From the NCBI RefSeq assembly GCF_006345805.1, contig NC_043012.1, positions 28,644,001 through 28,708,000 on the forward strand: DNA of 64,000 nucleotides. The letters run 5' to 3'. A program made the translations under genes and the position numbers. Numbering within the stretch: the first letter of the stretch is position 1; each line of letters begins with the position of its first letter. The DNA is from Octopus sinensis. Taxonomy: Eukaryota. The notes under the pieces were generated by a model that had not been told where the DNA came from, did not search any database, and saw nothing but the letters and a program-made list of their open reading frames with translations. Positions 1,291 to 55,793 of this stretch are shown one piece after another.

Positions 1291-1973
1291 TGTATGTGTG
1301 TGTCTGTGTGTGTGTATGTCATATATATTTTCGGCTGTAGGTTATATAAAGAACACCCTTCGCACATGGTTTCTCTCAAACCTTCTCATCTTGGTCTGCT
1401 ATTCGACACCTTCATATTACGAGGCGAAATGTCCAGCCGCTAAGCTAAGAAACATCTCTAGTTTTTAATCGTTCATCAATCTTTTCATTCATTTAATATG
1501 TATTACGAACATGCTAATGTTCTTGAGATAAATAACTTTGTAACCTGTAATTCGTTACTTCCTCAAATAACTTCTAGAATCATATCACTTTAAATATTTG
1601 ATATAATTCTCATGTGTTTCTATCGTTCTTTGCTTCACTATTGCCCTTTGCTGCTATTTCGATTTTCTTGTGGCGAAGCTAGCCATTTCTTCCATTTATT
1701 GTTTGCGATGTTCTGTGATGTTCTGTGATGCAAATAACCTTTTGATATGCAATACCAACTCCCTGAATCTAGCCAGCCACCTATCAATCAGGTGACTCTG
1801 CTAGGTAGACCGATTTCATTCTCACCAGAGAGCAGGATGCATGGTTGCTCTTAAATACAAAGACCCTCCCTGGTGAAGAATGTACCCACCAGCATAGACT
1901 AGTCATTAGTGAGTTATAGCTTCCAACTCTGTCGTGTCTGTGAATATATTCCTTGTTGGTCAGTTAGACACAA

Positions 1974-1974
<1 letters not shown>

Positions 1975-2040
<66 letters not shown>
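1975..2040. repeat. (ATT)n/(TAA)n microsatellite
   Basis: Pure att repeat abutting the end of the RT fragment. Confidence 0.95.
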
Positions 2041-2043
<3 letters not shown>

Positions 2044-3710
2044 CCTAGGTACTTGTAGCTCTCCGCTGGGTCTAGTTCTTTTATGACATTCTGCTGGTCA
2101 AGGTTAACGTTAGATGTTTCTGTCATTTTTCCTTTGATAAAGGTAGCCTTTGCACACTTATCGAGGCCGAATTGCATTCTGATGTCGTCACTGAATTGTT
2201 TGACTATCGCTAGTAAGCCCTTGAGTTGTTGGTCATTTTTTGCAAAAAGCTTTAAATCATCCATGTAAATGAGATGATTTATATTTTTATCAAACATTTT
2301 ATACCCGTACTGCGCGTCATTGAGCAGCTTTGAGAGAGGTATTAAGGATAAACAAAAGAGGAGTGGTGACAGTGAGTCACCCTGGAAAATGCCACACGAA
2401 ATTTTTACATCACCAGCATTTAGGGATTCATTGTCACTGTTCAGAGTTAGTGTGGTTCTCCATGATCTCATACTTACAGTCAAGAAGTTTCGCAGAGTAG
2501 GTGCTATCTTATACATTTCCAGGCATTTCCTAATCCAGCTATGTGGTAGACTATCAAAAGCCTTTTTATTGTCTATTCAGGCTATTGATAAGTTTTTGTG
2601 TCGTTTGTGACAATCTTCTAAGATCATCTTATTGATGAGTAGTTGGTCTTTACAGCCGTAGGATCCACGTTTACATCCTTTCTGTTCATTAGGGAATATG
2701 CTGCTGTCTGTTAAAAAACTATAGGTATATTCCGTCAGGACAGATGTTAGTGTTTTGTACATAGTTGTTAAGCAGGTTATGGGTCTATAGTTTTTTTGGT
2801 TCATTTGTTTCTTCACTTTTTGGAAGTAGGAATGTTAACCCATTAACTAGCCAAGGAGGCATCCTACTAGGGTGTTGCAAAACATCATTGTACAGTTCTG
2901 TTAACAGTTCATGGCTCTCTGGGAAGGCATTCAGCCAGAAGTTAGGAATTTTATCCTTTCCTGGAGACTTCCATTTGCTTGACCTCCTGAGAGCAGATCT
3001 TATATCTTCTACCTTGACACCCTCCCACTTTTGCTCTTCTAAGGGGTCCAGTTCTGTAGATATTCTGTCAATCCAGGGGGCCTTTTCGTTGTTTGTTTTT
3101 TCTTCTGCCCAGATTTTATTCCAAAATCCCTGCACTTCTTCTTTTGATGGTACAGACCTTGCAGTAAACGCTGTTTTTCCTATCTTCCTGTAAAAATTCT
3201 TGGTGTTATTTTTGAACATGTTGTTGTCCTTGAAAAATCTAACACGCTTTTCATACCTCGCTATGCGGGCAGCTTTGGCAGATACCTTTTGTTTGATGGT
3301 TTCTATGGTGGCATCAATATCAAGTATAGTTTTCATATTGTATTTTTTCAGTAATTTTGGGGTTTTTGTAGGTTTGGTAGTCTTGTGAGCCTTAAGGTTT
3401 TTCAAATATTCAATGTCAGATCTAAATATTTTAATTTGTTGTTGCAGACGCTCTTGCCAAGAAGGCTTTTTGTGGGAATGTTGCCGTTTTCTAATCTTTA
3501 CACCACATAGGATCGTTGAGATTTTCGCGGATGCATAGTATATTGAGGTTTGTGATATCAACATCATTAGCTGAAATTATATCCTTAAGTGCAAGCCGGA
3601 TTTTACCAATTATTTTCATGTTTTGGTTAGAGTTGCGGATTTTAGGAAGTGTATCACATTCATCCATGGTGGTTTCTTTAATTTTCAGCCATGCTAGTTT
3701 CTTTAATTTT
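2041..3710 (-). mobile_element. R4/Dong-clade non-LTR retrotransposon, RT region, frameshifted and truncated at both ends
   Basis: Three overlapping minus ORFs give KSPGKDKIPNFW, NYRPITCL, EQKGCKRGSYGCKDQLLIN, GIFQGDSLSPLLFC, HLIYMDDLKLFAK, FGLDKCA and YKYLG, which are RLE-clade RT motifs. Confidence 0.9.
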
Positions 3711-3899: not shown

Positions 3900-5170
3900 C
3901 CCAATAAAGCAGTTTTCTGAGCATATTCTACCCTCATATTAATCTCAATTTCTCAAACCTGGCCAAAATGCTTCCCAGTGCCCCTATAACTACAGGGATG
4001 ACTGTTACTTTCTTCAGGGCCCAGGTCCACATTCGTGCAATTTCATCTTTTAGCGGTTTCTCAGTTATTTCCAGTTCTTTGTTACTCACTCGTTCATTCC
4101 TAGGTATAGCAATATCTATGATCTTGGTTTCGTTCATCATTTTATCAACTACAACAATGTCTAGTCTGCGAACATCATTCATTGAATAACTCTGGATTGT
4201 AAAATCCCACAAGAGCTTATACTCATTATTCTCAGTGACGCCTTCTGGTGTTCATGCTCGTACCATTTTAATATCCTTTCAAGATCGTACTTCTCATACA
4301 ATCTCTAATACACATACTTAGCTACGTTATCATGCCTCCTTTTGTATTCCCTTTGGACAACCTTGCTACACTCACTCGCAATATCTGAGACTGTTTCAGC
4401 TTGATGCCACACATCTTATAAAGAGGAGACTTACTACTCTTATCTGTAATTAGTTCTCAGAGCCTCTTCCTGAGCGCTGTGTATCAATACTTCAGTACAT
4501 CCTTTCAAATGACTTTTCCACAGCCATCTTCCTCTTCCATTTCTCTGAGCGCTTTCCCATGCATGACTTTCACTTTCCAGTTGTTCAGTCTGTGTTCTCC
4601 ATATTGCTTCTTAAATACTTTCGGGTGTATCACATTTTCACTAGGTATCGTGTCGCTGTTTCTAATATCAACCACCAATGGTGCAATCTGCTGTTTCACG
4701 CACCATCTCACCGTTTTCCTCGTTGACATCACAGATCTTGCAGCCTATGATACTTCATCCTCTCTTATATCTCGGCACATGCAGTCTGTCGATATTGCTT
4801 TTAGCGTGCAGTTCCTTGTTCACTGTCATAACTTTCCTGGTTTTCTATCCATTTCCTTAAGCTCGTTCTTTGTCCATCTAACAACACTTGCGCCATATCA
4901 CACTAAGAAGACACCCCATGTATTTATTGTTCTGGTCCTTTCTTTCCATTGAGTTTACTCTATAATTAATTTGGTTCTTAGGTATTCTCACATAAAGCTT
5001 TCCTTGATCTTTTCATACTCCAAAATATCCAGATACTTACATCCATCCACCTGAACATCCTTAATTCTTTTACTGTTGGTAGTTATACATCATCAGATGA
5101 CACTACTTTGCCTTTTTTAATAAGCATACCGTTCCTTTTAATCCCAAATTCCATCCCGATATCAAATTTA
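3900..5170 (-). mobile_element. Second, older R4/Dong-like LINE remnant (RT end, linker, restriction-like endonuclease)
   Basis: Minus-strand peptides CKYLDI (RT end), MHGK.LR and WDFTIQ...RRLDIVVVDK...IIDIAIP...EIARMW...VIPVVIGALG (PD-(D/E)xK domain). Many stops and frameshifts. Confidence 0.8.
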
Positions 5171-5336: not shown

Positions 5337-6600
5337 CACTGTAACATCAGTCACCCGTAAGCAGAGAGTAGAGAAAGATGCGCTTTACAAGGTCACGTTA
5401 CTTAAGATAAAATGTTCTTATTTCAGTTATTTCTTAATGCCGTTTTTTTTTTCAATGTATATATGCTACATACATTGCTTTATTGCATCATGTTATATTA
5501 CAGTGCTTCTTTAATATTATGTATACACTTAGATAGTAAATCAAATATATGCTGTTAAAAATGTTCCCTTCTCCTTTCTTTACAGACCTCCACATCATTT
5601 GAAGCAAGGATGTTTTCTAGATGTGCAACAAGCCTGGATAACTTTTGTTACATTTCTGGCGCGTTTATGACCAAAAGAAAAACATTAATAAATTTGTCAA
5701 AAATCTTACTATGCCTACTTTGAAGGGAAATTAGGCGCCCAAGATAAAAAGTGGGCTCTTCATAAGGCCTGCTCAATTTGCGCTGAAGAACTAAGACAAT
5801 GGAGAAAGTGCACAGAGAAGTTTTTTTAAATTTTGGGGTTTCCAAAAAATCACAGTGATAACTACTACTTTTCTTTACATAAGGAGCAGGGACACAATTC
5901 GGAGAGTGGGAAAACATTGTTTATTCAAATCCCTCATCTGCATTACGACCTGTTACCCATGGACCAAACGTTCCAGTTCCATCCCCACCAGGAAACCATG
6001 AAGACTTACATTTGAGTTGTGAGGAGTCAGAAGGCAGAAATAGTAAATGATCTAGTGGGGAACTGAAGCTCAGAAAGGATTCATCAGAGATATTAGGTTT
6101 CAGACTTAGATCCAAGAGTCTTTTAGCTCCTCCAGCATTATTCTATTAATATCGTAACGGCGTAAAAATAATTTGTTCCTTATATCACTCAAGAAAATGA
6201 TTCATTTTATTGTACAAAATATGATTCGTTTTTATTGTTGATCCGAAAACGGTTCTTTTGCCACCTCTACTTGGCCTCATGAAGTAAATTGTAAAAGCTT
6301 TGCCACAGAATAAAGATGGCTTCAAAAATATACGTAGCAAGTTTTCAGTTCTATAAGATGCCAAAGCCGAAAAGGGTGTATTTGTAAGACAGATATAAAG
6401 AAACTCGCCAAGGATGAAAATGTTGAAAACTCTCTTGGTGATTTTGAAAAGATGCATGGATTTGTTTCAAAGATGCGATGAAGAACAAGGATCCAAACTA
6501 CAAAGACATAGTGGGAAGAATGCTGGCAAAGTTCGAAAATCTTATAATAATTCTGCTTGTCATTGCATTACTCAGCCCGTTGGTAACATTTTCACGTGAT
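5337..6600 (+). mobile_element. Decayed DNA transposon, Chapaev3-like (CMC superfamily)
   Basis: Fragmentary peptides CNKPG/DNFCYI, APKIKSG/WA.H..C..CAEELRQW, VLLPPL.LGLMK, KGVFV and KNKDPNYKDIVGRML; starts with CAC (cactgtaaca). Family name is from recall of motifs. Confidence 0.6.
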
Positions 6601-10917: not shown

Positions 10918-11607
10918 CCATTCGGTGAGCTTCCACACAGTTTCAATCGAGCTAATTTCACTCACGAACCTTCGATCGTTCCAATACTACGCAGTTTTGG
11001 ATGGGTTTATATATACTAGTTCATTTCGGCATTTTCATTTTCTGCCGACTGAAACTGCGCTTGCGTGGTAGATTTTGAAAAAATTATAACATATAAAGAT
11101 GGGACACGTGCTATTGGTCTCATATTTATAGGTTAGTCTTGAATGGCTCGGTTACTGATGAGAAGTTGCCTAGTAAATTATTTTATTTACTAAAAAATTT
11201 GAAACCTATAGGTATAACCGTAAAATCAAGGTAAAAGTTTTGATTTTTTCATTCCCTTTGAAATTGCTTAAATTTTGTGGTTTTCGGTCGTTTTGACTGT
11301 CTCCTAGCGAGTAGAAATTGCCTGTTATAGGTAATTTCTCTTTGTGTTTAAATGTACACTATTTTATATTGTCGTCTATTGACTTTTTATACATGCTAGG
11401 CCACTGGTAGTGAAATTTGTAAAAATTTACTACCCTATATATACATATACATACATACATACACACACATACGCACACACACACACGCACACACACATAT
11501 ATATATACATATATATAACCCCAAAACACTGTGTAGTATTGGAATGATCGAAGGTTCGTGATTGAAATTAGCTCGCTTGAAACTGTGTGGTAGCTTGCCG
11601 AATGGAC
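10918..11607. repeat. Pair of ~85-bp inverted SINE-like fragments (10918-11000 and 11521-11607)
   Basis: tccattcggtgagcttccacacagtttcaatcgagctaatttcactcacgaaccttcgatcgttccaatactacgcagttttgg reappears reverse-complemented with a few mismatches. Confidence 0.8.
11149..11220 (+). ncRNA. Minimal type-I hammerhead ribozyme motif
   Basis: Stem I CGGTTA/TAACCG, core CTGATGA, long stem II (GAA/TTT base plus TAGTAAAT/ATTTACTA), GAAA, palindromic stem III ACCTATAGGT, GUA cleavage site at 11214. Confidence 0.75.
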
Positions 11608-11693
11608 TGCATTGACCGTTGGCGGTTCGACGGCGAACTATTCACTTCTTATATTCCTAACATTTTATAGCCAATTACTGCAAACATTACCAC

Positions 11694-11696
11694 TCT

Positions 11697-11793
<97 letters not shown>

Positions 11794-11934
11794 GCTGCTG
11801 CTGCTACTACTACTACTACTACTACTACTATTTCTACTGCTACTGCTACTGCTGCTACTACTATACTACTACTACTACTACTATTTCTACTGCTACTGCT
11901 ACTGCTGCTGCTGCTACTACTACTCCTACTACAA

Positions 11935-12022
<88 letters not shown>

Positions 12023-12095
12023 CACTACTTCTGCTGCTGCTGCCAACGCGACCGCCAAACACCATCACCACCACCGCTATCATCATCATCATCAC
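11694..12095. repeat. Compound (CTA)/(CTG)/(CAT) trinucleotide microsatellite
   Basis: Direct reading; it explains the polyL/polyS/polyV ORFs. Confidence 0.95.
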
Positions 12096-12599
12096 GTTGA
12101 TATTTCTTTAAGCTTAGCAAAACATATTTTCCGACTTAAGTAAATAATTATTTGTGAAAAATCAACGTGTCTTGACAGAAAATATAACGTGGCGAGAGTT
12201 AGATGTCGGCAAACGATATGTGATGGGAATGATAATTATCAGAGTGGTATTCCATGTTTTGGGCAAGTTATTTTAGAGTCTACCAAATATGGAAGGAATT
12301 AAAAACAACGCTTTTACCGTTTGTTTGGGGTGATCATACACACGCGTGCGCGCGCGTATACATACATAAATACACGCATACACACACATATACAAACACA
12401 TGCACAAACTTATTCAACCACACGGACAAGCATATGTATTATGTGGGTAGGTAGGTAAGTAGGTAGATAGAGTGGTGGGTAGGTAGGTAGGTACTTCTGT
12501 GAAAGATGAGTAGTCCATGTATTTACAAGAATAAATAACATTAGAGAATCTATTATGTAATGAAGAGTTGTGAAGGCAAAGAATGGTTAATTATTCTTT

Positions 12600-15072
12600 T
12601 AGACATAACTTACACTTGCCGATGTTTGCATTGTATGGGGGAGCTTCGCTTACTATGGGCCAGGATAGAGTGTATGAAATATTTTGAGATTTTATGTTGT
12701 GTATATACGTTGCTAAGGAGACTGATAATATAGAATTTGGATTGGAGGAAGAATTCCTGTGTGAACGGTAGTGGCGCTTGAAATCTACGGTGCCACCGAT
12801 ATATACCCTTGCTTGGTGGGAGTGTTGTTTTATAACACGGCACTTGTAGATTACATTTTTGCGTAGGCAGGAGCCTCCAAGTGGGCATAGTTGGGAAACC
12901 TGACAATTGCAAGTTTTCCTACCTGCTCGATGGTTGGGATTTACTGCTAGTGAGGTTGAGCTCCGTTAGTTCATTGTTACTGGGGGAGAACCTGAAGTGA
13001 AATTTGTATTTGTATTGGATTGTGAGGTGATATTGCAGCTAGTATTTGTTGTTGCGTCGGTAGGATCGTGGGATGATGGTTTGAGTCTGGTATTATTTAA
13101 TTGAGGGGGGTTACTAAGGGTTGTGTTATTGCTACTATGTGGGCTAATTTGGGATACAGTATGAGATTTTAGTTATTCTGAGGATTGGTATTGGAATTCG
13201 CAATTGCTCGAGGAGGTGATTATGGATCCTAAACTACGTGTGCTGGAGTAGAAGATTTTCGCGGATGATTTGTTAAAGATGGCATAGTATTTATGCTGTG
13301 GTGGAAAATTAAATTTTAGGATTTTGAAGTAGAGTTTAGGTAGAGATTTAATTTGGAGAGAGAAAGGTGGTGCGACCCATTAGATTTCTCTCTTCCTGAC
13401 CTTAGAATGTTTAGAATGTGTGGTTGTAGTAAGTTTATCAGGAGGGGGTGCTTGTAGTTGTTATAGGCTAGGGGGCGACCAGTGGGGTAGCCAAATGCGA
13501 TGTGTAGGGGTTTTTTTTAGAGTTGTTGGGTTACTGTAGAGTGGAAATAGTATTAGTAGATTCAGGGTTAGTATTAGGAAAGAAATGTGTTATTTTAGTT
13601 TTAATCTTAGTATTGGGGATACAATAGATTTTTTTCGCTGAAGCCACTTATTTGGAGGGTCTGATTATAATAAGGGGCGTGAGTGTTAAAAATTTCTACG
13701 TTAACAGGTAAGTTAGAGATTCTGATAGATATGACTATGACAACGCTCTTAAGGATAAATTTAGGGTGATTAGAGAGGACATTTATATATTGTAAAGATT
13801 GGTTGGGTTTATGGAAACAGTGATATAGATGTGTGTTTAAGTCGAGAATAACATCTAAGGAATTTGCCACCTTAGTGTCAATTTCGAATTAAATACTCAG
13901 GTTATGATTTTTAAAAAACTGTGTAGGGCTTTCTTGGTGCATTCCACTGATGATCGAGATAATCCAATCGCTGAAAGGAGTGCATCATTCCTGTATAGTC
14001 TACCGGAGAGGTTGGAGAAGTATTGTTTAATTTGAGAGAGAAGGAATAGGCCAACTAGGTCAGTAACCTGGGCTGAGTCCGATACGCTTATGGTTACATT
14101 GAAGAAATCCGTAGATGAGTTGCAGGTCCAATTATTATCCTTAAAGTGAATTAGAGTCTTCATCGCAGCCAGGATGATATTGATGTCAGATCGGGAGATG
14201 GGAATATATTTTCGGGTGAACATTAGGGCTTTATTTAAGAAGATTGGTGGTATTGATGAACAATAATTTGGGATGTCAAATTGATGAAAATGGATATGTT
14301 GTTTATCATGAAGAGAGTGAAACCAAGTGATAACGTCTCCTGTGAAATTCCAGAGCGGAAGCTTAACGTTAATCCTAACAAGTGGTAGAATACGGTCAAT
14401 AATACATTTACTAATTCGATCTAAGTTGGATCTAGAGGAGCAGATTAGTCTAATGGAAGGCTTAGTGTAGAGATGAGTCTAATGGAAGTCTTAGAGTAGA
14501 GGCGAATCTAATGTAAGGCTTAGAGTAGAAGTTGAGTTTGTAGTCCTTTAGGGTAAAGTGGGGGAATATGGTTCAGTTCTGGTTAGTAAATTTAAATCGG
14601 CGATAAGCTTACACTGGATGTTGTTAATCTCATTAAGGGCATTTTTATGTGTATGTTTTTAATTTGTGTTTAGTTCCTTTGATATGAAGTTAGTATACGT
14701 TTCCAAGGGAAGGGCGTAAAGATTGCCGGTTTTGTCAGAAGAGAGTGCAGGTGTAGTGAAGTCCTTATTTTAGATGTAATTTTGGATAGTAATTTTTGGA
14801 AGAAATTAGTATAATTAGAGAATTACTATAATTAGATCTTTCACAAAATTAGCCAATGCAGGGTTTGGGGGTGAGCTGTTGTGGGACTTTAGGTTGTAAG
14901 TGTCCTTTGCATTAGAATGTGCAGGATAGTTAGATTTTAGGTTATAGTGTAGGGCTTTCCACCTCATTCGAGTGATAAAATTATTAATCTTCTGTAGTAA
15001 TAGTTCCATATTTAGCTCCCTTGGTGGGATTGGAATATTTTTTGTAGGTATACCCCAAAATTGCTTAGCCAT
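12600..15072 (-). mobile_element. Near full-length decayed Penelope-like element (RT + GIY-YIG endonuclease), possibly Naiad-type
   Basis: KNIPIP...FITRMRWKAL; FNVTISVSDSAQVTDLVGL...LYRNDAL (RT); LDVILDL...KPNQSLQYINVLSNHP; FPPQHKYYAIFNK; TCNCQVSQLCPLGGSC...VIYKCRV...VYIGGT...CK (EN). Confidence 0.85.
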
Positions 15073-15122: not shown

Positions 15123-15910
15123 AGACGAGAAACAGATGTTCTCTGTATAGAATACACTTCATGGTGCTCAAAAGATTTAAACTTGAACTGGTAGAGGAGT
15201 AAATGTAAGAACAAGCAAGTTAGGCAAGTCAATATACAGAAAATATTAAATACACTTGATACAAAAAACGTACATATGTTTACATATAAAAATGTCCGGT
15301 TTACACAATAGAAATGATATCAGGAATTAAAGGGGTCGAATAAGAGTTTTACGAGTCCAACAGCTGTTTCTGGGGACTTGGTGGTCCAAAATAATGATTG
15401 TAAAATGATTCCATCATCAGATAATACCAGCCTCCGTCTTCAGGGAGGTATTTTACATTTGGGGTGTTGACAGAAAGATTAAAGACGGAATGATTTTGTG
15501 GAGAACTAATTCTTCCTTCTAATACACTTAGTTCTCCACAAAATCATTCCATCTTTAATCTCCTTTCTGTCAACATCTAAAATGTAAAATTCCTCCCTGA
15601 AGACGGTGGCTGATATATCCGATGACGGAATCATTTTACAATCATTATCTTGTATCACCAAGTTCCCAGAAACAGCTGTTGGACTCGTAAAACTCTTATT
15701 CAACCTCTTTAAATCTTGATATCATTTCTATTCTGTGTAAGTCGGACCTTTTTATATGTAAACATATGTACATATTAATGTATTTAATACTTTCTTTATA
15801 TTGACTTGCCTAACTTGCTTTTCCTTACATTTACTCCTCTACCTGCTCAAATTTAAATCTCTTGAGCACTACGAAGTGTATTCTATACGTAGAATATCTG
15901 TCTCTCATCT
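15123..15910. repeat. ~385-bp inverted duplication (15123-15509 vs 15528-15910), likely inverted pLTRs of the adjacent PLE
   Basis: Arms are reverse complements at roughly 85% identity (by eye) and directly adjoin the PLE start codon. Confidence 0.8.
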
Positions 15911-26360: not shown

Positions 26361-26467
26361 ACATATGTATGTATGTATGAATGTACGAATGCATGTATAT
26401 ATGTATACACGTATGTATGTATTATATATAGGATGAGAAAATAGAGTGGTAAATAAATACATTATAA

Positions 26468-26789
26468 TTTATCAATTAACAAAATGACAAACATCTCTTA
26501 CAGGTGTTTCAATTCAAACCCTCAGAAAATTACTTAATTAAATTAAAAATTAAACATTATTTGAAAGTCGAATCTCTTTAAATGTAGATAAAAATATATA
26601 AAATAGTTGTCCAATTCCTGCATGTTGAGTAAACTGCTGCAAACATGCAGGAATTGAACAACTATTTTATATATTTTTATCTACCTTTGAAGAGATTCGA
26701 ATTTCAAATAATATTTAATTTAATCAATTTTCTGAGGGTCTGAATTGAAACACCCGTAAGAGATGTTTGTCATTTTGTTTATTGATAAA
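26468..26789. repeat. Large imperfect palindrome (~150-160-bp arms, 15-nt loop)
   Basis: 26468-26626 is reverse-complementary to 26642-26789. Confidence 0.9.
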
Positions 26790-26856
26790 TAATGATTTAT
26801 TAATTACCTCTCTATTTTCTCATCTTATTATTATCATTATTATAATATATATATAT

Positions 26857-35364: not shown

Positions 35365-37717
35365 CGTTCGAAGATACTGTACTTGATATGGGCGGTAGTG
35401 CCTTGCCGGTCTATGGCCTACCTTCAACAAACCGGGAAGGCACAAACACTCTGTCTTCACATTTGCTGCGTGAGACATGATTTAATGTTGACGAGCTTGC
35501 CGACAATGAGCCAAAGCTCCTTCCAGAACAGAAGTTCGCTTACAACTCCGTTGTTAATTCAGTCCGGGCCAAAGCTGGGGGGATTTTTTTTTCCTGGACG
35601 CTCCTGGGGGCACTGGGAAAACTTTTGTCAACAAATTAATATTGGCTGAGATTAGGCGAACACAAGGCATTGCCCTAGCTGTGGCATCACCTGGAATTGC
35701 GGTTACTTTGTTGCCAGGCGGCAGGAAAGCTTACTCCACCTTCAAGCTCCCGCTTGACTTAGCGAAGACTGAGACACCAACTTGCAACATCAGTAACAGC
35801 TCCGATCAGGCAGAAGTCTTCAGACAATTCAAGCTTATCGTTTGGGATGAATGCACGATGGCCCACAGAGGTGCTCTTGAGGCACTAGATAGATCTCTCA
35901 GAGACATCAAACACTCTTCAGCTCCCATGGGAGGCATAACACTTCTTCTTTCAGGGGATTTCCGACAAACACTTCCCGTTATTTCCAAAGGGACTAGAGC
36001 TGATGCAGTAAGTGCGTGTCTTAAGTCATCCACATTGTGGCCACTGGTGAAGACTCTCAAACTTCACACCAATATGCGTGCTCATATGCGACGTGATATC
36101 ACATCAGCAGCATTTTCTCACACCCTCCTTGCACTTGACGAAGGCAAAATACCAGGGGATGAAAATGATAATATTGCCATCGATTCCATTTGTACCATTG
36201 TTAAAACGCCTTCTGATCTCAGAGATGCAGTGTTCCCAGATCTACAAGCTAATTATCAGAATATGGATTGGATTGGCCAAAGGGCTATTCTGGCCCCGAG
36301 GAATAAAACTGTTTACCATATTAATGATGAAATGCTAAAACTCATTGCTGGGGATGTCTATGCATATAAGTCTATCGATACAACTCCTGACCCAGAGGAC
36401 GTCATCAACTATCCTATAGAGGTACTCAATTCCTTTGAGCCCCTGGACAACCACCACACATTCTCAAACTTAAAGTTGGTTCCCCTATAATGCTCATTAG
36501 AAATTTGGTTCCCCCAAAACAATGCAATGGCACACGTTTGATCGTTAAGTCCTTATCTCCCAATCTGATTGAGGCCACCATTATCACAGGGTGCGGTCGA
36601 GGCAACGTTGTGCTCATACCTAGGATGCATCTTTTCCCATCAGGAGCAAACCTACCTTTCATATTTCGGAGGTCCCAGTTCCCAGTAAGGCCATGTTTCG
36701 CAATGTCAATTAACAAAGCGCAGGGTCAAACACTGTCTGTGGCGGGAATACATTTGGGAGAGCCATATTTCTCTCATGGTCAGCTTTATGTTGCCTGCTC
36801 GCGTGTCGGCAGCAACACTGGTGCTTTCGCATTCGTTCCACAACGAAAAACAAAAAAAAACATTGTGTACAAGGAGGTTTTATAGGATTACTACGTTTCA
36901 TCATTTTCGAACACGTTAGTATTTCACTTACATACGACTCTCTTTTATGATGGCATTTACATTTTTAGGCGTTTCATGACATTAATTCACACTTAACCAA
37001 CACCTGTCCTTCGCTCACCTCTATTTCTATCCATTCATCATCAAAACACCAGCCTCATCTTCTATATCCAACGTACATGACACATCTACCCCCTACATCT
37101 ACACTCTCACTGTTAAAGTTTACATAAGCGACAACACGATCGCAACATACACTTTGGAAACTAAGCAACAGATCATTTTATACAACAACACATTTAATCA
37201 TAACGCCCATCAATGAAAACATCTCCACCACTGTGTTGTGATTTATCTATTCAACACCACTACAGTCTTGCCGGTCTGACATATGGTGAGTAGATGCTAT
37301 TGTTCTATAAATTACCCATATTTACTTACCCATGCTTCATTCCCCTCTTGCCTACATAGGGCATCCATTCTCTTTTAACACAGCATGAAGTTTTGTAACA
37401 GCACATCCGCTGCCGTTCGTGGAAAACTAAGAGACCCTATTCACCTGCGAACGCTTTACACCGCCTTCCACGACTATCAGATCTTACAATTAAGAGAACA
37501 ATAACATGGCTCTTTTCAAGGCAACCTCGCATTCAATTTTTACACCATTCTACGAGGGGGTAGGAACCCCTTTACACGGCTTTCTATACACTTACAAATA
37601 CATTCATTCGCCGTAAACTTATATCAATATTTGCCTGAATAATCATCATAATTCAGTGCAATCATTAACAGTACTTTCAAGCAATTCAGCCCCGAGCAAC
37701 GCCGGGCAATTCTGCTA
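35365..37717 (+). mobile_element. Helitron 3' half: PIF1 helicase (frameshifted), 3' UTR and terminus
   Basis: LDAPGGTGKTF, LIVWDECTM, LLSGDFRQTLPV, NGTRLIV, FAMSINKAQGQT, SHGQLYVACSRV, KNIVYKEVL. Terminal hairpin GCCCG-agcaacgc-CGGGC, then CTAG at 37714-37717 followed by T. Confidence 0.9.
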
Positions 37718-38479: not shown

Positions 38480-39470
38480 GCCCACACCCGAGACAGAGGC
38501 AGAAATCTCATGTAGGGGTAACACAACATATCCACTGAACGGCTACTTTAACACGAGGCAGATGTAACAATAGTAGAACCAAATGGGCAACCAAACGTGC
38601 GAAAGTACGTGGGAGAAACTAAAAGCCCCTTCAGAACCCGCTATAGCAACCACAAGTCCTCTTTCAACATTCAGGAGATATGTAATGCCACAACCCTACC
38701 CAAACACGTATGGCCATTGAAAAATAGTGCCACCGAGTACAACATAAAGTGGGAGATTCTAGAGAAATGTAAAGAGTACTTCAATAGCAGCTGGAAGTGC
38801 AGTGTGTGTCATTCTCGCAGCAGTGTGTGTCATTCTCGCAGCAGTGTGTGTGTGTGTGTGTTATTCAATAGCAGCAGAAAGTGCAGATTATGCCTGGCTG
38901 AGAATAGCAGAACTGAAAATTTTAATACTTGCCCACATGAAAATGATATACATCCTATCATACCTTCATGCCCCATCATGACTATAATAATCATTTACTC
39001 AACTTCAACCCTTCACTAATACCTGGGAATCCAACAGTGTTTGACCAGAAGATACACAAATGCACCTACCAACAAACACACGCCCCAGCACGGCGGCCAC
39101 CCACTCGCCCCAGCACTGCGGCCACCACGAATTTAAGCAAAACATAATAAGGAAGCACACAAACGAACACAGCTGTGTGTGCCAACACCACCCACAAAGG
39201 TTATACACATTCCATTTCCACATGAACACCAACCTTAAAAACTTGTTTTGGTACCAAGGGACGTAATTTAATCCCCTGCTCAATTCGCTTCAACACCTTT
39301 TCACAGCAACCACAAACCGGATGTATCTATTCACCTCTAACAATAGAGAGCAGTCGCCATATTTCATTCTATATCGGCTACCTCTGATGAGCGCATGGTT
39401 ACATAATCTGATTGTTACCTAACACTCCATCGAATCCCTAGTGCGAAACCGATGGGTAAGATCGGCCGTA
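38480..39470 (+). mobile_element. Penelope-like element 3' part (GIY-YIG endonuclease + 3' region)
   Basis: KYVGETKSPFRTRYSNHKSSF...NATTLPKHVWPLK...IKWEILEKCKEY...CRLCLAE. Confidence 0.85.
39375..39470 (+). ncRNA. Type-I hammerhead ribozyme motif in the PLE 3' region
   Basis: CTGATGA (39384-39390), stem II GCGC/GTGC, GAAA (39445-39448), stem III ACC-gatg-GGT, GUA site at 39458. Stem I CT/AG plus CGGCT/GGCCG around an internal loop. Confidence 0.6.
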
Positions 39471-40548
39471 ATGTATATATAATACTCCACACTTTGACTA
39501 ATATAGCTACTCTACTGGGATATACGAGTGTATATTTCCTGACTTATGAAAGCTTAGAGGCTTACACACACACACATACACACACATACACTCATATATA
39601 TATGCTTATTTCGGTTAATGACTTATTCAGGAATATAGCAACACTAGCGCTCCTGAGGGTAATATTCTCTGGGAACGCACAAAAGGCCTTTTTAGAGTTA
39701 TTTACTTTGAATTATTATCTCATACCTGATTAGCCTGTTATTACGTAACATGCTTCACGATTTTAGTATACATACCTTATTAGTATTTCAGCCTATGTTT
39801 TATATACTCTGGGAGCGCCTTTCGAAAGAAGCCCGTCGTATATATATATTATTTAGTTATTGAAGATATGTATTTCATTATTAGATTATAACTTAGCCAA
39901 CGAGATATGTAGATCGTTAAATAGTTATACAGTTCTTTTAAGATAAGTTATACGTTTATAATTTGCTTTTTAATCTTTAATTTTTTAATATATTTCATAA
40001 ATATATTATATTAATATTTGATATTTACGTAAGTAATAATGGACTAATTAATTTTAATCCTTGCCCACATGAAAATGATATACATCCTATCATACCTGCA
40101 TGCCCCATCATGACTATAAATCTAATGATTACATATATTCTGATCTTCCAGTAGAGAAAGTTCCTTTCTAAGGATAATTTTAACTCAAGTAAGGGCTAAT
40201 TGAGGTAGTATATTTTATACCCTGCTAGTGTACTGGTTTTATCCTCAAGTATTATTTCTTGATGTGCATATAAATACCACGAGTTTTCCATCATAAATAG
40301 TCGTTATGTTATTTTTGCATTATCTGAAATGGAATACCCACGAATCTATTGATTGAAATCCCAATAACTGAACTATTATTAATTTCTATTATTATATATT
40401 TTGTATATTTATATATAAATATATCATAATCATGATCTCACTGTACGATATGCTGGTATACCCGGTATATATTCTCCATATTAAAATGCATGTAATGCTA
40501 AAGGGTGTGTACCTGATCGATTTAGAAATTCGTTTTCCGACATTATTC

Positions 40549-40581
<33 letters not shown>

Positions 40582-40618
40582 GTGTGTGTGTGTGTGTAAT
40601 TATGTATATATATACAAA

Positions 40619-41131
40619 AAGGACACAGGGAAAAATGTGTCAAGGCCATCAGGAGGCGTTCGATGCTTCCTAGGGCTATACAGCGGTGGTGTACCCCCTA
40701 CTGTCACGTTCTTGTTAGATTGACAGTATACAACCATTCTATCGCCCCACCACCGTACATGTCTCTACGAGAGATTTAGAAATTCAATATTTCTTATTTT
40801 GATAATCAGTGAATAGACTTCACTGAATATAGATATATACAATTGCGAAGTCGAGGCAAATATCACCGGCTGACCGGTGTCTGCTACTCTAGGCCGATGA
40901 AGGACAACGATCCTGAAACACGTGTCCCTAGATGCAGTTCCGGCAGCCGGGGGTGTTTGTCTCCCCTTCGTAAATGTATATAAGGACACAGGGAAAAATG
41001 TGTCAAGGCCATCAGGAGGCGTTCGATGCTTCCTAGGGCTATACAGCGGTGGTATACCCCCTACTGTCACGTTCTTGTTAGATTGACAGTATACAACCAT
41101 TCTATCGCCCCACCACCGTACATGTCTCTAC
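40619..41131 (+). mobile_element. Retrozyme-like / pLTR-like tandem unit, period 363 nt (150-bp direct repeats at 40619-40768 and 40982-41131)
   Basis: Repeats differ at one position in 150 by my reading; the unique part of the unit carries a hammerhead motif. Confidence 0.7.
40866..40950 (+). ncRNA. Type-I hammerhead ribozyme motif with extended stem I (U4C core variant)
   Basis: Stem I TCTAGG/CCTAGA extended by CTGC/GCAG, CCGG/CCGG and CCGGCTG/CAGCCGG. Core CCGATGA, stem II AGGA-caacga-TCCT, GAAA, palindromic ACACGTGT, GUC site at 40926. Confidence 0.8.
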
Positions 41132-41539
41132 ATGCGTGTGTGACAGGCCATTTAGTTGAACTCCCATTAAAATCAATATTTTTCATTCGATTTCGTTCAC
41201 ACTTGGCATATACATCATTTATGTTCTAGAGATGGTACTACTCTTCAGATTATTCACTTATGGCGTAATATGGTGTTATGGGGCTTCAGGTTTAAGAAAA
41301 AGTTCCATTCCTGGGATTTGTGTCTAATCTGGACAAGAGAGGTAACTCTTTGCGAAGTAATATTCAGAAATTGATTGTCTCTCTTATATTTGTATCTCTT
41401 AAACACTTTTGCATAGTACGTAAATAAACAATATGGATAATCGTTGCTTTAAGTGAACATAATGAGTAACGCTACACCTACTGGACAAGACGAAAGCATC
41501 TTTTCATAGTAGGTAGAGCGATCACCCTCCCACTACCCA

Positions 41540-43622
41540 TGCCAATTACAACGGCGGGCTTCTTCTCTTGAAAGACTTGGTTATGGCAAGTGGAGATCAA
41601 CGATTGGACGCTTACTCTCTCAACACTCCAGACAGAAATGAAGACGCCTGTCCTAATCGCCTTATCCACAGAGAAACATCCTACAACATCTACAAACGCA
41701 ACCAGTACATTGCTGACAAGACTCTTCTGAATTCCGATCAAAGCTGACGTATGCAATTTTGTCCTCAGAAACATCTACACACACACTGGCGGAATCATCT
41801 TCTTCGACGCACCCGGTGCAACTGGAAAAACATTCCCCCTGAATCTTCTTCTTGCGAAGTTGTGGCGTAATGGTGACCTTTCTATTGTTGTTGCTACCTC
41901 AGAAATAGCCTCGACTCTTCTCGACAGCAGATGAACAGCAGACTCTACCTTCAAATTGCCTTTCAACGTAACACATCAAGAAAACCCAACGTGCCACATA
42001 ATGCATTCCTCGGACGAAGCGATAATTTTGAAAAAGTGCAAACTCATTGTTTGGGATGAAGCAACTATGCCCCATAAATGTTCCCTACAAGCACTTTACA
42101 CCACAATGAGAGACCTTAGATCGAACAACATTCTTGGAGGTGCGACACACTCTGCCTATTAAACCCAAAGGAACACTGCTCATAAACTTAATACCTGCCT
42201 TTAAAAGTCCCTCCTTTGATTGCATGTCCAATTGAAACAACTCACCATCAACATGGGATGACGCCTACAGACTGGTCAGTCTACAACCCAGTTTTCGGAA
42301 ATGCTCCTTAAGATCGGCAATGGACAAATTACGTCCGACAACAATGGATACATTCACACTACTGCCACTGGCCACATTGTCTTCATCCCGTTTACCCAAA
42401 TCTAACAACGGAATACATAGAACCAGCTTGGCGTTTCAACAGGGCCGTTCTTGCCCCTACAACTGCAGCTGTCAACATTCTTAACTACGACTTACTGAGT
42501 CAGGTACCTTCTGAAGAATGTTGTTACAGACCAGTTGACACCGTTACTGACCTCGATCAGGTTACACACTTTCCAACACAATTTCTCAACTCCCAACATC
42601 CTGCAGGACTCCCTCCCTATGAACTTCACTTAAAATCGGTTGCCCTGTAATCCTCCTACGCAATCTAAATGCCCCTACACTACAAGCAACAGAACTTGCC
42701 TTGTGGTCAAACACAATGATGGACCACGTCATCAAATCCCAAATTATCACGGTACAAGGCAAAAACGATATCGTTTTCATTCCGAAAATTCCGCTAACCC
42801 CAACAGACTGCTCCTACCCTATGCAGAGACTTCAGTTCCCTCTCAAATTCAGCTTCGCCATGACAATTAGCAAAGCACAAGGTCAATCACTGAAAGTTGT
42901 CGGATTAGACCTTCGAACGTTGTACTTGAACAGTTCTACGTCAGTTGTTCCAGAGTTGGCCAGCCAGACAACTTACTCATCTATGCGCCTGAAGGAAAAA
43001 CCAAAAATGTTGTCTACAAAGCAGCCCTACAGTAGTTATTCCTCTACTGCAATCTTCACATCTATGCCAAACTGTGGCTGTTAGCAATCAGACTTCCTGT
43101 AAGCATTCCATTGATATTTTGCTTCATTTCCCCGATTGCTGTTAACAGTACATTACCTTCAATGACCCTTCTTACTTCATGCACACTGTTCGCTCATAAG
43201 CATGCTCTGATATTTATTTTTCTATTTGTGTGTTTGCTATAAATGTTTGCTTTTCTTTATCATATATGGCTTTCATTGAAAAAAAAAAGCTTCAATGCAG
43301 TTGTGTCAGGCATTACGAGTAAAACAACTACATGCTACAAAACACTTCAGGTGAGATAAAGGATCCCTAATGCCTACTGCAATTGTGATCTCATTTTATG
43401 GGCTTTCATTTATTACTAACTGCCAAATTTGCGTTCAAAAAACTTTATTCATTACCTAAGTTGCTTAATACCATATAAACTGCTAACGAAAATGGCAATT
43501 AAACATTTTGCGTTTATCAACTTGAAACGACTTCTAGCTGCGGGCTAATTCAAATTAAACCGTCCACAGGAGTGCACCATTATAAGAAATTACACCGTCC
43601 AAAGGACGGGTGCATTTGCTAG
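41540..43622 (+). mobile_element. Second, more decayed Helitron 3' half with intact terminus
   Basis: FFDAPGATGKTF, KLIVWDEATM, QRLQFPLKFSFAMTISKAQGQSL, KNVVYKAAL. Hairpin CACCGTCC-aaa-GGACGGGTG, then CTAG at 43619-43622 followed by T. Confidence 0.85.
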
Positions 43623-45880: not shown

Positions 45881-46136
45881 ATTAACAATTAAGGAACGGC
45901 CATAATAGGCCATTCACCCACTAGAAATAACAGCCAAAGCTTCTACCGCAAATAAAGATTAATTCCGTAAACAGGAGAAAATTAAAAATTAAAAAATTAA
46001 AATTAAAATTAAAAACAGGGTAAATGTTTTTTTAATTTTCTCCTGTTTACGGAATTAATCTTTATTTGCGGTAGAAGCTTTGGCTGTTATTTCTAGTGGG
46101 TGAATGGCCTATTATGGCCGTTCCTTAATTGTTAAT
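45881..46136. repeat. Perfect 108-bp inverted repeat with 40-nt A-rich spacer
   Basis: 45881-45988 is the exact reverse complement of 46029-46136 by base-by-base reading. Confidence 0.95.
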
Positions 46137-55055: not shown

Positions 55056-55099
55056 CCACCTGACGAATGTCATTTGAAGACATGAAACGATTGTAGTGG
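55056..55099 (+). ncRNA. Compact minimal type-I hammerhead ribozyme motif with fully canonical core
   Basis: CCAC-CTGACGA-ATGTC-atttgaa-GACAT-GAAAC-gatt-GT-A-GTGG. Confidence 0.8.
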
Positions 55100-55183: not shown

Positions 55184-55252
<69 letters not shown>

Positions 55253-55256
55253 CTTT

Positions 55257-55328
<72 letters not shown>

Positions 55329-55334
55329 ATATAT

Positions 55335-55660
55335 AAGAATAAAGAGTTTTGAATGGTACAACAATGCACTATAATACAGACAATGGGCTATTAATACCTG
55401 TTGTAATTTAGTAATCCATAGTCTGATATGATATTTCGGAATAATATTCCTTCTTCGGATATTCTTAGATGGAGTCGCTGCAATATTCGGTTTTCTAACT
55501 TAGAAAACCCATTATAGCAGCGACTCCATCTAAGAATATCTGAAGAAAGAATATTATTCCGAAATATCATATCAGACTATGGATGACTAAATTACAACAG
55601 GTATTAATAGCCCATTGTCTGTATTATAGTGCATTGTACCATTCAAAACTCTTTATTCTT
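55335..55660. repeat. Large imperfect palindrome (~160-bp arms) centred on 55499, next to (TA)n
   Basis: Arms are reverse-complementary; central hairpin ggttttctaa-c-ttagaaaacc. Confidence 0.95.
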
Positions 55661-55697
55661 TACAAACAATACACAATGCTTCAAGCAGACTATAATA

Positions 55698-55793
<96 letters not shown>

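What the first reader, a model, noticed from the sequence alone, without database searches (positions are those of the whole stretch)
40619..41131. Young 363-nt tandem unit carrying a hammerhead: candidate cephalopod non-LTR retrozyme (circular RNA replicon)
Seen: two 150-bp direct repeats (40619-40768 and 40982-41131; one mismatch) give a 363-nt period next to a TG/TA microsatellite, with no recognisable coding content. The unique part folds into a type-I HHR (40866-40950) with a long interrupted stem I, stem II AGGA/TCCT, palindromic stem III ACACGTGT and a GUC site. Established: metazoan non-LTR retrozymes are short (a few hundred nt) tandem repeats with type-I HHRs whose multimeric transcripts self-process into monomers and circles; minimal HHRs with palindromic stem III act as dimers. 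Inference: this is a ~1.4-mer insertion of a non-autonomous ribozyme-bearing retroelement, probably mobilised by the PLE RTs abundant here. The core reads CCGATGA (U4C), so this copy may be attenuated.
Basis: partly seen in the sequence, partly recalled or inferred. Interest (0 to 1): 0.8.

Follow-up and report, generated by a model that had tools for sequence, protein, structure and literature searches.

The report
Octopus hammerhead-ribozyme retrozyme copy, core mutated
This is a recent, about 1.5-unit insertion of a small non-coding mobile element from an octopus genome that carries a self-cleaving hammerhead ribozyme; it is a new example of a known class (animal retrozymes), and this copy has a mutation in the ribozyme core.

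Summary
Two 150-nt direct repeats (one mismatch) give a 363-nt period. The unique part carries a type-I hammerhead ribozyme (HHR): 6-bp helix I, 4-bp helix II, an 8-nt palindromic helix III and a GUC cleavage site. Its core reads CCGAUGA, so U4 is replaced by C.

The motif is not chance. None appeared in 300 simulated windows. The 363-nt RNA folds far better than shuffles (z = -8.4).

Sampling about 125 kb of Octopus sinensis and O. bimaculoides DNA gave two homologous copies. One has the canonical CUGAUGA core, compensatory changes in helix I, and a different but still palindromic helix III. The window's U4C is therefore a derived change.

None of the three loci has an adjoining ORF. All lie in or beside microsatellites. 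All show a partial-tandem or head-to-head inverted arrangement, as Penelope-like element (PLE) insertions do.

Best reading: a non-autonomous HHR retroelement of the non-LTR retrozyme kind, copied from a circular or multimeric RNA, probably by PLE machinery. This locus has a single, mutated HHR and is probably a dead copy.

Circular RNA, self-cleavage and genome-wide copy number were not testable. It is a new member of a known kind, of moderate interest.

The parts
40549..40597 (.). (TA)12(TG)13.5 microsatellite; left flank and probable target site
   Evidence: TRF rows 40549-40572 (AT) and 40572-40597 (TG)
40596..40768 (+). Upstream 5'-truncated partial copy: the last ~12 nt of segment B with a TA expansion, then segment A (40619-40768)
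   Evidence: nhmmer envelope 40597-40751
40769..41131 (+). Full 363-nt unit: B (40769-40981, unique, carries the HHR) plus A' (40982-41131). 5' end GAGAGATTTAG, 3' end CATGTCTCTAC. The forward copies in L003 and L005 begin at the same 5' end, and the L005 copy ends at ...ATGTCTC beside an assembly gap
40827..40981 (+). Long imperfect hairpin (quasi-rod) that extends helix I of the HHR. Whole circular monomer: MFE -137.4 kcal/mol, z = -8.4
40888..40932 (+). Type-I hammerhead ribozyme motif. Helix I 40888-93 / 40927-32; core 40894-40900 (CCGAUGA); helix II 40901-04 / 40911-14; loop 2 40905-10; GAA 40915-17; palindromic helix III 40918-25; C17 at 40926; predicted cleavage between 40926 and 40927
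40895..40895 (+). C at core position 4 (U4C). It is derived: both homologues have T here
   Evidence: Alignment A2
40885..40887 (+). UAC bulge on the 5' strand of helix I. With U40933 and A40910 (the 3' A of loop 2) it sits where the Schistosoma HHR makes its loop 1 / loop 2 tertiary contacts
   Evidence: Schistosoma contacts IL1.U1, IL1.C8 and L2.A6 and loop 2 CAAAUA from PMC2632901
41132..41143 (.). Right flank ATGCGTGTGTGA, read as a (TG)n remnant. The insertion would then sit inside a TG microsatellite
   Evidence: read directly from the sequence

Best explanation
The locus is a recent genomic copy, about 1.47 units long, of a 363-nt non-coding hammerhead-bearing retroelement of an Octopus genome. 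The element is of the kind described as metazoan non-LTR retrozymes.

Proposed life cycle (inferred by analogy with described retrozymes):
1. Multimeric transcripts of tandem master copies are cut by the type-I HHR. Its short palindromic helix III favours action as a dimer.
2. The 363-nt monomer, a highly base-paired quasi-rod, is ligated into a circle.
3. A reverse transcriptase with endonuclease, most likely of a Penelope-like element, starts cDNA synthesis at a fixed internal site (the ...CATGTCTCTAC end).
4. It runs around the circular or multimeric template for more than one unit.
5. The product is inserted at a microsatellite.

This would give the arrangement seen here: a 5'-truncated partial copy, then a full unit, between (TA)n(TG)n and a (TG)n remnant.

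This particular copy holds one HHR, and that HHR has U4 replaced by C. It cannot release monomers and is probably a dead-end copy.

Shown: the anatomy, that the motif is not chance, the strong RNA structure, homologues with a canonical core and compensatory changes, the absence of coding sequence, and the microsatellite flanks.

Inferred: the RNA circle, the PLE partner, and the loss of activity.
For: 1. The HHR matches the published canonical metazoan type-I architecture: helix I 6 bp, helix II 4 bp, helix III short with a palindromic loop (PMC4209133). Nucleotides equivalent to the Schistosoma tertiary contacts are in place.

2. It is not chance: 0 hits in 300 simulated windows.

3. Structure. 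The circular monomer has z = -8.4, and none of 39 GC-matched genomic 363-mers from the window folds as well. The L003 unit has z = -7.4 and its hairpin z = -4.9.

4. Homologues.
- L003 843-1178, minus strand: core CUGAUGA; helix I CCUGGG/CUCAGG, with two both-sided and one one-sided change relative to the window; helix III ACAUGCAUGU, a different sequence that is still a perfect palindrome.
- L005 14597-14839: a decayed copy.

5. Unit size 363 nt, GC 45.7%, no ORF with homologues. Retrozymes are described as about 170-400 nt, below 50% GC and non-coding (PMC7229834).

6. PLE-type insertion signatures.
- Partial tandem in the window.
- An inverted fragment or copy head-to-head with the forward copy in L003 (1179-1253) and in L005 (14365-14506, minus strand).
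- Microsatellites at the ends in all three loci.

7. The DNA copies are continuous across the cleavage site and end elsewhere. The template was therefore not a cleaved linear monomer (read).

8. A second, unrelated tandem HHR array in O. sinensis (L004, 560-nt period, 3.3 units, one HHR per unit) shows that the genus hosts such arrays.
Against: - Only 1.47 units and a single HHR are present here, and no tandem master array of this family was seen.
- The core has U4C and a 10.1-11.1 A-U pair in place of the usual G-C. The Rfam score is well below the gathering score.
- In L003 and L005 helix II is weakened (CGGA/CCCA and AGAA/CCCA). The three copies therefore do not give a clean functional consensus.
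- Nothing was found for the unit in the viral or metagenome collections, or for its longest ORF in the protein collection.
- No autonomous partner was linked to the family.
- Expression, cleavage and circularisation are untested.
- Loci were sampled only next to Helitron genes, so any density estimate is rough.
Confidence: 0.7

Rival explanations
1. The unit is a solo pseudo-LTR, or the terminal non-coding part, of an autonomous Penelope-like element. It would not be an independent non-autonomous family.
For: Partial-tandem and inverted arrangements and microsatellite targeting are PLE hallmarks. PLE pLTRs carry HHRs with a dimer-prone helix III. Retrozymes and pLTRs are reported to be phylogenetically intertwined (bioRxiv 10.64898/2026.07.22.740005). 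PLE-like ORF remnants exist in the window.
Against: None of the three loci has coding sequence between or next to the repeats. The HHR is the canonical type with tertiary-contact nucleotides, whereas PLE HHRs are described as minimal motifs that lack them. The unit shows no similarity to the sequence downstream of the PLE-like ORF remnants in the window.
Confidence: 0.15
2. It is a SINE-like HHR element, comparable to Schistosoma Sm-alpha. It would be transcribed by pol III and mobilised by a LINE, and the 3' microsatellite would be its tail rather than the target.
For: Simple repeats abut the 3' end in all three loci. A LINE-like RT is present in the window.
Against: ARAGORN finds no tRNA-like head. 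Microsatellites also lie on the 5' side in the window and in L003. Partial-tandem and head-to-head inverted copies are not SINE features.
Confidence: 0.08
3. It is a local DNA-level duplication or satellite fragment with no RNA intermediate. The HHR would be a relic or a chance motif.
For: Only 1.47 units are present. The core is mutated and the Rfam score is below threshold.
Against: The motif does not arise by chance. Related copies lie on other chromosomes of other species, with compensatory changes in helix I and a preserved palindromic helix III. A plain tandem duplication would give two full copies.
Confidence: 0.05

Closest known systems
Metazoan non-LTR retrozymes (Cervera and de la Pena 2020, PMC7229834), for example those of Mytilus galloprovincialis, Acropora millepora and the axolotl
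   Same: Unit of a few hundred nt (363), below 50% GC, non-coding. Type-I HHR with 6-bp helix I, 4-bp helix II and a short palindromic helix III. Strongly self-paired monomer RNA. Dispersed related copies.
   Different: Here there are only 1.47 units with one HHR, whose core carries U4C. No array of this family was seen. RNA circles are not shown. No paper on cephalopod retrozymes came up in the literature searches.
Schistosoma mansoni Sm-alpha hammerhead, the crystallised full-length type-I HHR
   Same: 6-bp helix I followed by an internal loop with 5'-UAC-3' on the 5' strand and a U on the 3' strand. 4-bp helix II with a 6-nt loop of the form CAAnnA (CAACGA versus CAAAUA). GUC cleavage site (for the Schistosoma loops; the full Schistosoma sequence is from my memory).
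   Different: Core U4C and an A-U 10.1-11.1 pair. Internal loop 1 is 3 x 1 nt rather than 4 x 4. No SINE-like pol III head.
Pseudo-LTRs of Penelope-like elements carrying minimal HHRs (Cervera and de la Pena 2014, PMC4209133; Craig et al. 2021, PMC8557442)
   Same: Partial-tandem and inverted 5'-truncated arrangements, insertion at microsatellites, and an HHR with a dimer-prone helix III.
   Different: No RT-EN ORF at any of the three loci. The HHR is canonical rather than minimal.
Newt satellite 2 and axolotl HHR repeats
   Same: Unit of about 330-350 nt and a type-I HHR whose weak helix III makes it work as a dimer.
   Different: Those form very large arrays. Here only short copies were seen.

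Membership tests
Hammerhead ribozyme, type I (Rfam RF00163) | Invariant core C3-U4-G5-A6-N7-G8-A9 | tested here: not met
   The window reads CCGAUGA, with C at 40895. Homologue L003 reads CUGAUGA.
Hammerhead ribozyme, type I (Rfam RF00163) | G12-A13-A14, an A15.1-U16.1 pair, and H17 at the cleavage site | tested here: met
   GAA 40915-17, A40918-U40925, C40926 (GUC).
Hammerhead ribozyme, type I (Rfam RF00163) | Three helices around the core, with helix I open (type I) | tested here: met
   The MFE fold and the HHR-constrained fold agree, -74.1 versus -72.5 kcal/mol.
Hammerhead ribozyme, type I (Rfam RF00163) | Score at or above the curated gathering score | tested here: not met
   14.3 bits against 34, although the alignment covers model positions 1-45 of 45.
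Hammerhead ribozyme, type I (Rfam RF00163) | Self-cleavage | not testable with these tools
   Needs in vitro transcription of C4 and U4 versions, as monomer and as dimer.
Canonical metazoan type-I HHR (PMC4209133) | Helix I 6 bp, helix II 4 bp, helix III 1-2 bp with a 2-4 nt palindromic loop | tested here: met
   6 bp, 4 bp, and ACACGUGU (2 bp plus loop ACGU, or 8 bp in a dimer).
Canonical metazoan type-I HHR (PMC4209133) | Loop 1 / loop 2 tertiary-contact nucleotides | tested here: inconclusive
   U40933, C40887 and A40910 occupy the positions of IL1.U1, IL1.C8 and L2.A6 of the Schistosoma HHR. This is positional correspondence only.
Non-LTR retrozyme (PMC7229834) | Short tandem repeats (dimer or longer), each unit with an HHR | tested here: not met
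   This locus has 1.47 units and one HHR. L003 and L005 also have one forward HHR each. Arrays elsewhere in the genome could not be searched.
Non-LTR retrozyme (PMC7229834) | Monomer of about 170-400 nt, GC below 50%, no coding capacity, no LTR/PBS/PPT | tested here: met
   363 nt, 45.7% GC. The longest ORF of the unit has no homologue and three of its ORFs are not on record as called genes.
Non-LTR retrozyme (PMC7229834) | Multi-copy and dispersed in the genome | tested here: met
   Three loci in about 189 kb from the window, O. sinensis and O. bimaculoides. The true copy number is unknown.
Non-LTR retrozyme (PMC7229834) | Highly self-paired monomer RNA | tested here: met
   z = -8.4 for the window monomer; z = -7.4 for the L003 unit.
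Non-LTR retrozyme (PMC7229834) | Expressed as linear and circular RNA | not testable with these tools
   No RNA-seq or northern data are available here.
PLE pseudo-LTR | Flanks an ORF encoding RT and a GIY-YIG endonuclease | tested here: not met
   There is no such ORF between or next to the repeats in the window, L003 or L005.
PLE pseudo-LTR | Partial-tandem or inverted 5'-truncated arrangement, and microsatellite insertion bias | tested here: met
   Window: partial tandem in (TA)n(TG)n. L003: inverted 75-nt fragment, flanked by (TA)n and (CT)n(TA)n. L005: inverted partial copy, with (TA)n(CA)n at the 3' end (criteria).
tRNA-derived SINE | tRNA-like head carrying a pol III promoter | tested here: not met
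   ARAGORN finds nothing in 39000-42500.

The most novel reading that the evidence does not exclude
This is a recently active, octopod-specific retrozyme family whose DNA copies share fixed ends (5' GAGAGATTTAG ... CATGTCTCTAC 3') about 158 nt away from the ribozyme cleavage site, and which run through that site for more than one unit. This would be genomic evidence that a PLE-type reverse transcriptase starts at a specific internal site on a circular ribozyme-processed RNA and copies it by rolling circle. Retrozymes would then be linked mechanistically, not only phylogenetically, to the 'internal initiation' behaviour shown in vitro for a PLE.
Probability: 0.3. Interest if true: 0.6.

Novelty: new member of a known kind. 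Interest (0 to 1): 0.4.

Why it matters
Retrozymes are small ribozyme-bearing RNA circles that spread through animal genomes. How they are copied back into DNA is still inferred rather than shown.

An octopus family would extend the known range within molluscs to cephalopods. Its features are a canonical hammerhead, defined DNA ends away from the cleavage site, greater-than-unit-length copies, head-to-head inverted copies and microsatellite targets.

The family also gives a concrete sequence for testing the proposed PLE-driven, circle-templated mechanism, using RNA-seq junction reads and a pile-up of genomic copy ends.

The locus itself is an ordinary dead copy and has no evident effect on a host gene.

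Tried and rejected
- Rfam at gathering thresholds found nothing in the window or in L003-L005. Weak sub-threshold hits appeared only in very small search spaces.
- No second copy of the unit exists in the window, by blastn or nhmmer.
- Exact-pattern scans of the HHR in metagenome and viral contigs found nothing.
- The 111-aa minus-strand ORF of the unit has no homologues. Three unit ORFs are not on record as called genes.
- Apparent similarity of both flanks to the unit is not significant: 11 to 29 of 300 shuffles do as well.
- No tRNA-like head.
- RNAalifold on a MAFFT alignment of the window and L003 hairpins was uninformative, because indels misalign the rod. I compared independently folded and HHR-constrained structures instead.
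- Three other HHR-like motifs in the window (11155-11214, 39372-39477, 55060-55095) have no thermodynamic support, with z between -0.7 and +0.5.
- I tried to confirm that the GIY-YIG-like ORF remnants are PLE. There was no Pfam, NCBIfam or PDB hit for the window fragments. Distant full-length homologues gave only weak GIY-YIG hits and no RVT_1 hit. Their PLE assignment therefore stays an inference from architecture.

Full report
**1. The observation**

The two 150-nt direct repeats are real: 40619-40768 and 40982-41131, 99% identical, 363 nt apart. They differ only at G40691 versus A41054.

Reading the sequence, the first copy probably extends back to about 40596. GTAATTATGTATAT(ATATACAA)AAGG matches GTAAATGTATAT-AAGG at 40970-40985 once two small indels in a TA-rich stretch are allowed. 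A three-sequence profile places its envelope start at 40597. The repeated block is then about 535 nt, or 1.47 units.

On the left lie (TA)12 and (TG)13.5 microsatellites. On the right the flank begins ATGCGTGTGTGA, a (TG)n remnant. The block therefore sits inside a TG microsatellite.

The window holds no other copy (blastn, nhmmer). The flanks are not significantly similar to the unit.

**2. The hammerhead**

- helix I: UCUAGG / CCUAGA, 6 bp
- core: CCGAUGA
- helix II: AGGA / UCCU, 4 bp, with loop CAACGA
- GAAA, then the palindrome ACACGUGU
- C17, with cleavage between 40926 and 40927

The minimum-free-energy fold of the surrounding 159 nt is essentially the HHR fold: -74.1 versus -72.5 kcal/mol when the HHR helices are imposed.

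Rfam's Hammerhead_1 model aligns from its first to its last position. It has the same 14-nt helix II segment and the same 4+4 palindromic helix III. It scores only 14.3 bits against a gathering score of 34, and nothing in the window reaches a gathering score. By Rfam's standard this is not a hit.

I therefore tested chance directly. I wrote a descriptor for the canonical metazoan type-I HHR: helix I of at least 6 bp, helix II of at least 4 bp, a short helix III hairpin, and at most one core mismatch. It finds only this site in the window and none in 300 simulated windows of the same first-order composition.

The architecture is the one Cervera and de la Pena give for most metazoan HHRs: helix I 6 bp, helix II 4 bp, helix III 1-2 bp capped by a 2-4 nt palindromic loop. 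Such HHRs work as dimers in tandem transcripts (PMC4209133).

The nucleotides that make the loop 1 / loop 2 contact in the crystallised Schistosoma HHR are the 5' U of internal loop 1, the extrahelical pyrimidine next to helix I, and the 3' A of a CAAAUA loop 2 (PMC2632901). They have positional counterparts here: U40933, C40887 within a UAC bulge, and A40910 of loop CAACGA. This is correspondence by position, not a test.

There are two departures from the consensus. C replaces U4 at 40895, and the 10.1-11.1 pair is A-U rather than G-C.

**3. The whole unit as RNA**

I permuted the unit to begin at the cleavage site and folded it as a circle.
- The 363-nt monomer (45.7% GC) has an MFE of -137.4 kcal/mol.
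- Dinucleotide shuffles give -90.1 +/- 5.6 kcal/mol, so z = -8.4.
- None of 39 GC-matched 363-mers from the same window folds as well.

Helix I continues into an imperfect rod of about 55 bp (40827-40893 with 40927-40981). The rest forms a branched domain.

**4. Relatives**

The unit's ORFs were no handle on other copies. Pattern scans of the viral and metagenome collections found nothing.

The Helitron helicase ORF at 35642-36490 identified the source as an octopod. Its best matches are Octopus bimaculoides and O. sinensis proteins at 76-81% identity. It also gave access to six 21-kb stretches of those two genomes. Two of the six contain relatives of the unit.

*L003 (O. sinensis).* The minus strand 843-1178 is a nearly full unit, about 74% identical overall and up to 89% locally. 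Its HHR has:
- the canonical core CUGAUGA;
- helix I CCUGGG/CUCAGG, still 6 bp, with two pairs changed on both sides (A-U to G-C and U-A to C-G) and one G-C to G-U change relative to the window;
- a UAU bulge with an opposing U;
- helix III ACAUGCAUGU, a different sequence that is again a perfect palindrome.

The L003 hairpin folds with z = -4.9 and the whole unit with z = -7.4.

*L005 (O. bimaculoides).* The stretch 14597-14839 is a decayed copy with core CUUAUGA.

Two of three copies have T at core position 4, so the window's C4 is derived.

Helix II is 4 bp only in the window copy. It reads CGGA/CCCA in L003 and AGAA/CCCA in L005. Three copies therefore do not yet give a clean functional consensus.

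**5. Anatomy of the insertions**

The forward copies in L003 and L005 begin within 2 nt of the position that corresponds to window 40769 (GAGAGATTTAG). The window block ends at ...CATGTCTCTAC (41131). The L005 copy ends at ...ATGTCTC next to an assembly gap.

The window block is therefore best read as a 5'-truncated upstream copy (about 40596-40768) followed by one full unit (40769-41131).

In L003 a 75-nt inverted fragment lies head-to-head with the forward copy. It is the reverse complement of the last 48 nt plus the first 28 nt of the unit, so it spans a unit-to-unit junction. In L005 an inverted partial copy lies at 14365-14506.

All three loci end in or beside microsatellites:
- window: (TA)n(TG)n on the left and a (TG)n remnant on the right
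- L003: (TA)n on one side and (CT)n(TA)n on the other
- L005: (TA)n(CA)n beyond the gap at the 3' end

Partial tandems, adjacent inverted 5'-truncated copies and a bias for microsatellites are the published signatures of Penelope-like element insertion (PMC8557442). A purified PLE protein starts reverse transcription at internal sites of its RNA (PMC11167929).

The DNA copies are continuous across the ribozyme cleavage site and end about 158 nt away from it. The template therefore cannot have been a cleaved linear monomer. It was either a religated circle or an uncleaved multimer (inference).

**6. Coding context**

Nothing between or next to the repeats codes for a recognisable protein in any of the three loci.

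Elsewhere the window contains the following.
- A LINE-like RT at 1914-3576, minus strand (RVT_1; motifs read).
- Helitron helicase fragments (motif read).
- Two decayed copies of an ORF family with a YIG...R...H signature, at 12594-12965 (minus strand) and 38552-38920 (plus strand). They are related to each other at E = 2e-8.

Distant full-length homologues of that family are 690-806 aa. They carry a YRDDG motif followed by a C-terminal domain, and for that domain three of the six homologues scanned give weak GIY-YIG matches, E about 1e-3 to 1e-2 and below threshold. An RT-like protein with a C-terminal GIY-YIG nuclease is the PLE architecture. However, RVT_1 did not match, and neither Pfam nor PDB supports the window fragments themselves. 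The PLE label is therefore an inference.

**7. Interpretation**

The best-supported reading is a non-autonomous, hammerhead-bearing retroelement of the non-LTR retrozyme kind. These are units of about 170-400 nt, below 50% GC, non-coding, highly self-paired and carrying a type-I HHR (PMC7229834). A recent preprint argues that they derive from PLE pseudo-LTRs.

One defining feature is not met at this locus or in the two relatives: tandem units each carrying an HHR. With a single HHR, and that one carrying U4C, this copy cannot release monomers. It is most likely a dead insertion, of the 'monomer derivative' kind described.

U4 belongs to the invariant core and to the uridine turn.

**8. Rivals**

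- A solo pLTR of an autonomous PLE cannot be excluded without a genome-wide search. It is disfavoured by the lack of ORFs at three loci and by the canonical rather than minimal HHR type.
- A SINE-like, LINE-mobilised element is disfavoured by the absence of a tRNA-like head and by the tandem and inverted arrangements.
- Chance is excluded.

**9. Abundance and age**

Three loci were found in about 189 kb of octopod DNA. This suggests thousands of copies or more per genome. The sampled stretches all lie next to Helitron genes, so this is only a rough inference.

One mismatch in 150 nt between the two repeat copies indicates a recent event. By contrast, divergence from the O. sinensis copy is about 25%.

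**10. Verdict**

It is a new member of a known kind, not a new kind. The literature searches turned up no paper describing retrozymes in cephalopods. That is the extent of its novelty, apart from the mechanistic hint given by the fixed ends.

Noticed in passing
L004:3476-5342 (O. sinensis CM016870.1): A tandem array of about 3.3 units with a period of about 560 nt, 96-100% identical. Each unit carries an HHR-like motif (3981-4024, 4540-4583, 5102-5145): UGAG CUGAUGA, 25 nt, GAA, ACGUACGU, U, CUCA. The core is canonical and helix III is palindromic. None appeared in 100 simulations. The 559-nt monomer folds with z = -5.1. It is unrelated in sequence to the window unit, and it looks like a true retrozyme array in Octopus. 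It is flanked by 86-94% direct repeats at 2844-3125 and 5639-5985.
   Followed up: partly
window 38552-39604: A GIY-YIG-like ORF remnant (38552-38920, + strand) is followed about 450 nt downstream by an HHR-like motif with a perfect core (39372-39477; Rfam HH9, 14.5 bits against a gathering score of 52; weak helix I; fold z = +0.35). An (AC)n microsatellite follows at 39564-39591. This may be the 3' end of a 5'-truncated PLE.
   Followed up: partly
window 38918-38987 and 40050-40119: A 70-nt direct repeat, 97% identical and 1132 nt apart. The first copy starts just after the GIY-YIG-like ORF remnant. It is unexplained, and it may be another partial-tandem structure.
   Followed up: no
window 12594-14478 (- strand): Decayed ORFs of a family whose full-length homologues (690-806 aa) have a YRDDG motif and a C-terminal CxC...CPLxGxC plus GIY-YIG-like domain. 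The representative library holds 1962 relatives at E <= 0.001. Pfam does not recognise an RT. It may belong to a PLE clade with a C-terminal endonuclease.
   Followed up: partly
window 1914-3576 (- strand): An RT ORF split by a frameshift or stop, with motifs that look LINE-like rather than PLE-like (NYRPITCL, FQGDSLSP, YMDDLKL). It is interrupted by an (ATT)n-type run that reads as poly-Ile.
   Followed up: no
window 35558-36885 and 42623-43081 (+ strand): Helitron-type PIF1 helicase fragments. The first is 76-81% identical to Octopus bimaculoides proteins, and its DNA is 88% identical to L002.
   Followed up: partly
window 11155-11214 and 55060-55095 (+ strand): Two motifs with a strict CUGANGA...GAAA core and HHR-like helices. 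The first has the palindromic helix III ACCUAUAGGU. Neither has thermodynamic support (z = -0.7 and +0.5). They are probably chance or decayed.
   Followed up: partly
window 15123-15910, 26417-26837, 45881-46136, 55206-55788: Four long self-complementary (palindromic) stretches, 85-90% complementary, resembling foldback elements.
   Followed up: no
window 41136-41150: The right flank TGTGTGACAGGCCAT resembles TGTGTCAAGGCCAT inside the repeat (40635-40648). It is not significant by shuffling (85 of 300 do as well), but it lies exactly at the insertion end, where PLE 'tails' occur.
   Followed up: partly
window 11690-12040: A long (GTA/GCA)n trinucleotide microsatellite lies downstream of the GIY-YIG-like ORF at 12594, with a (TACC)n run at about 12440-12490.
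   Followed up: no
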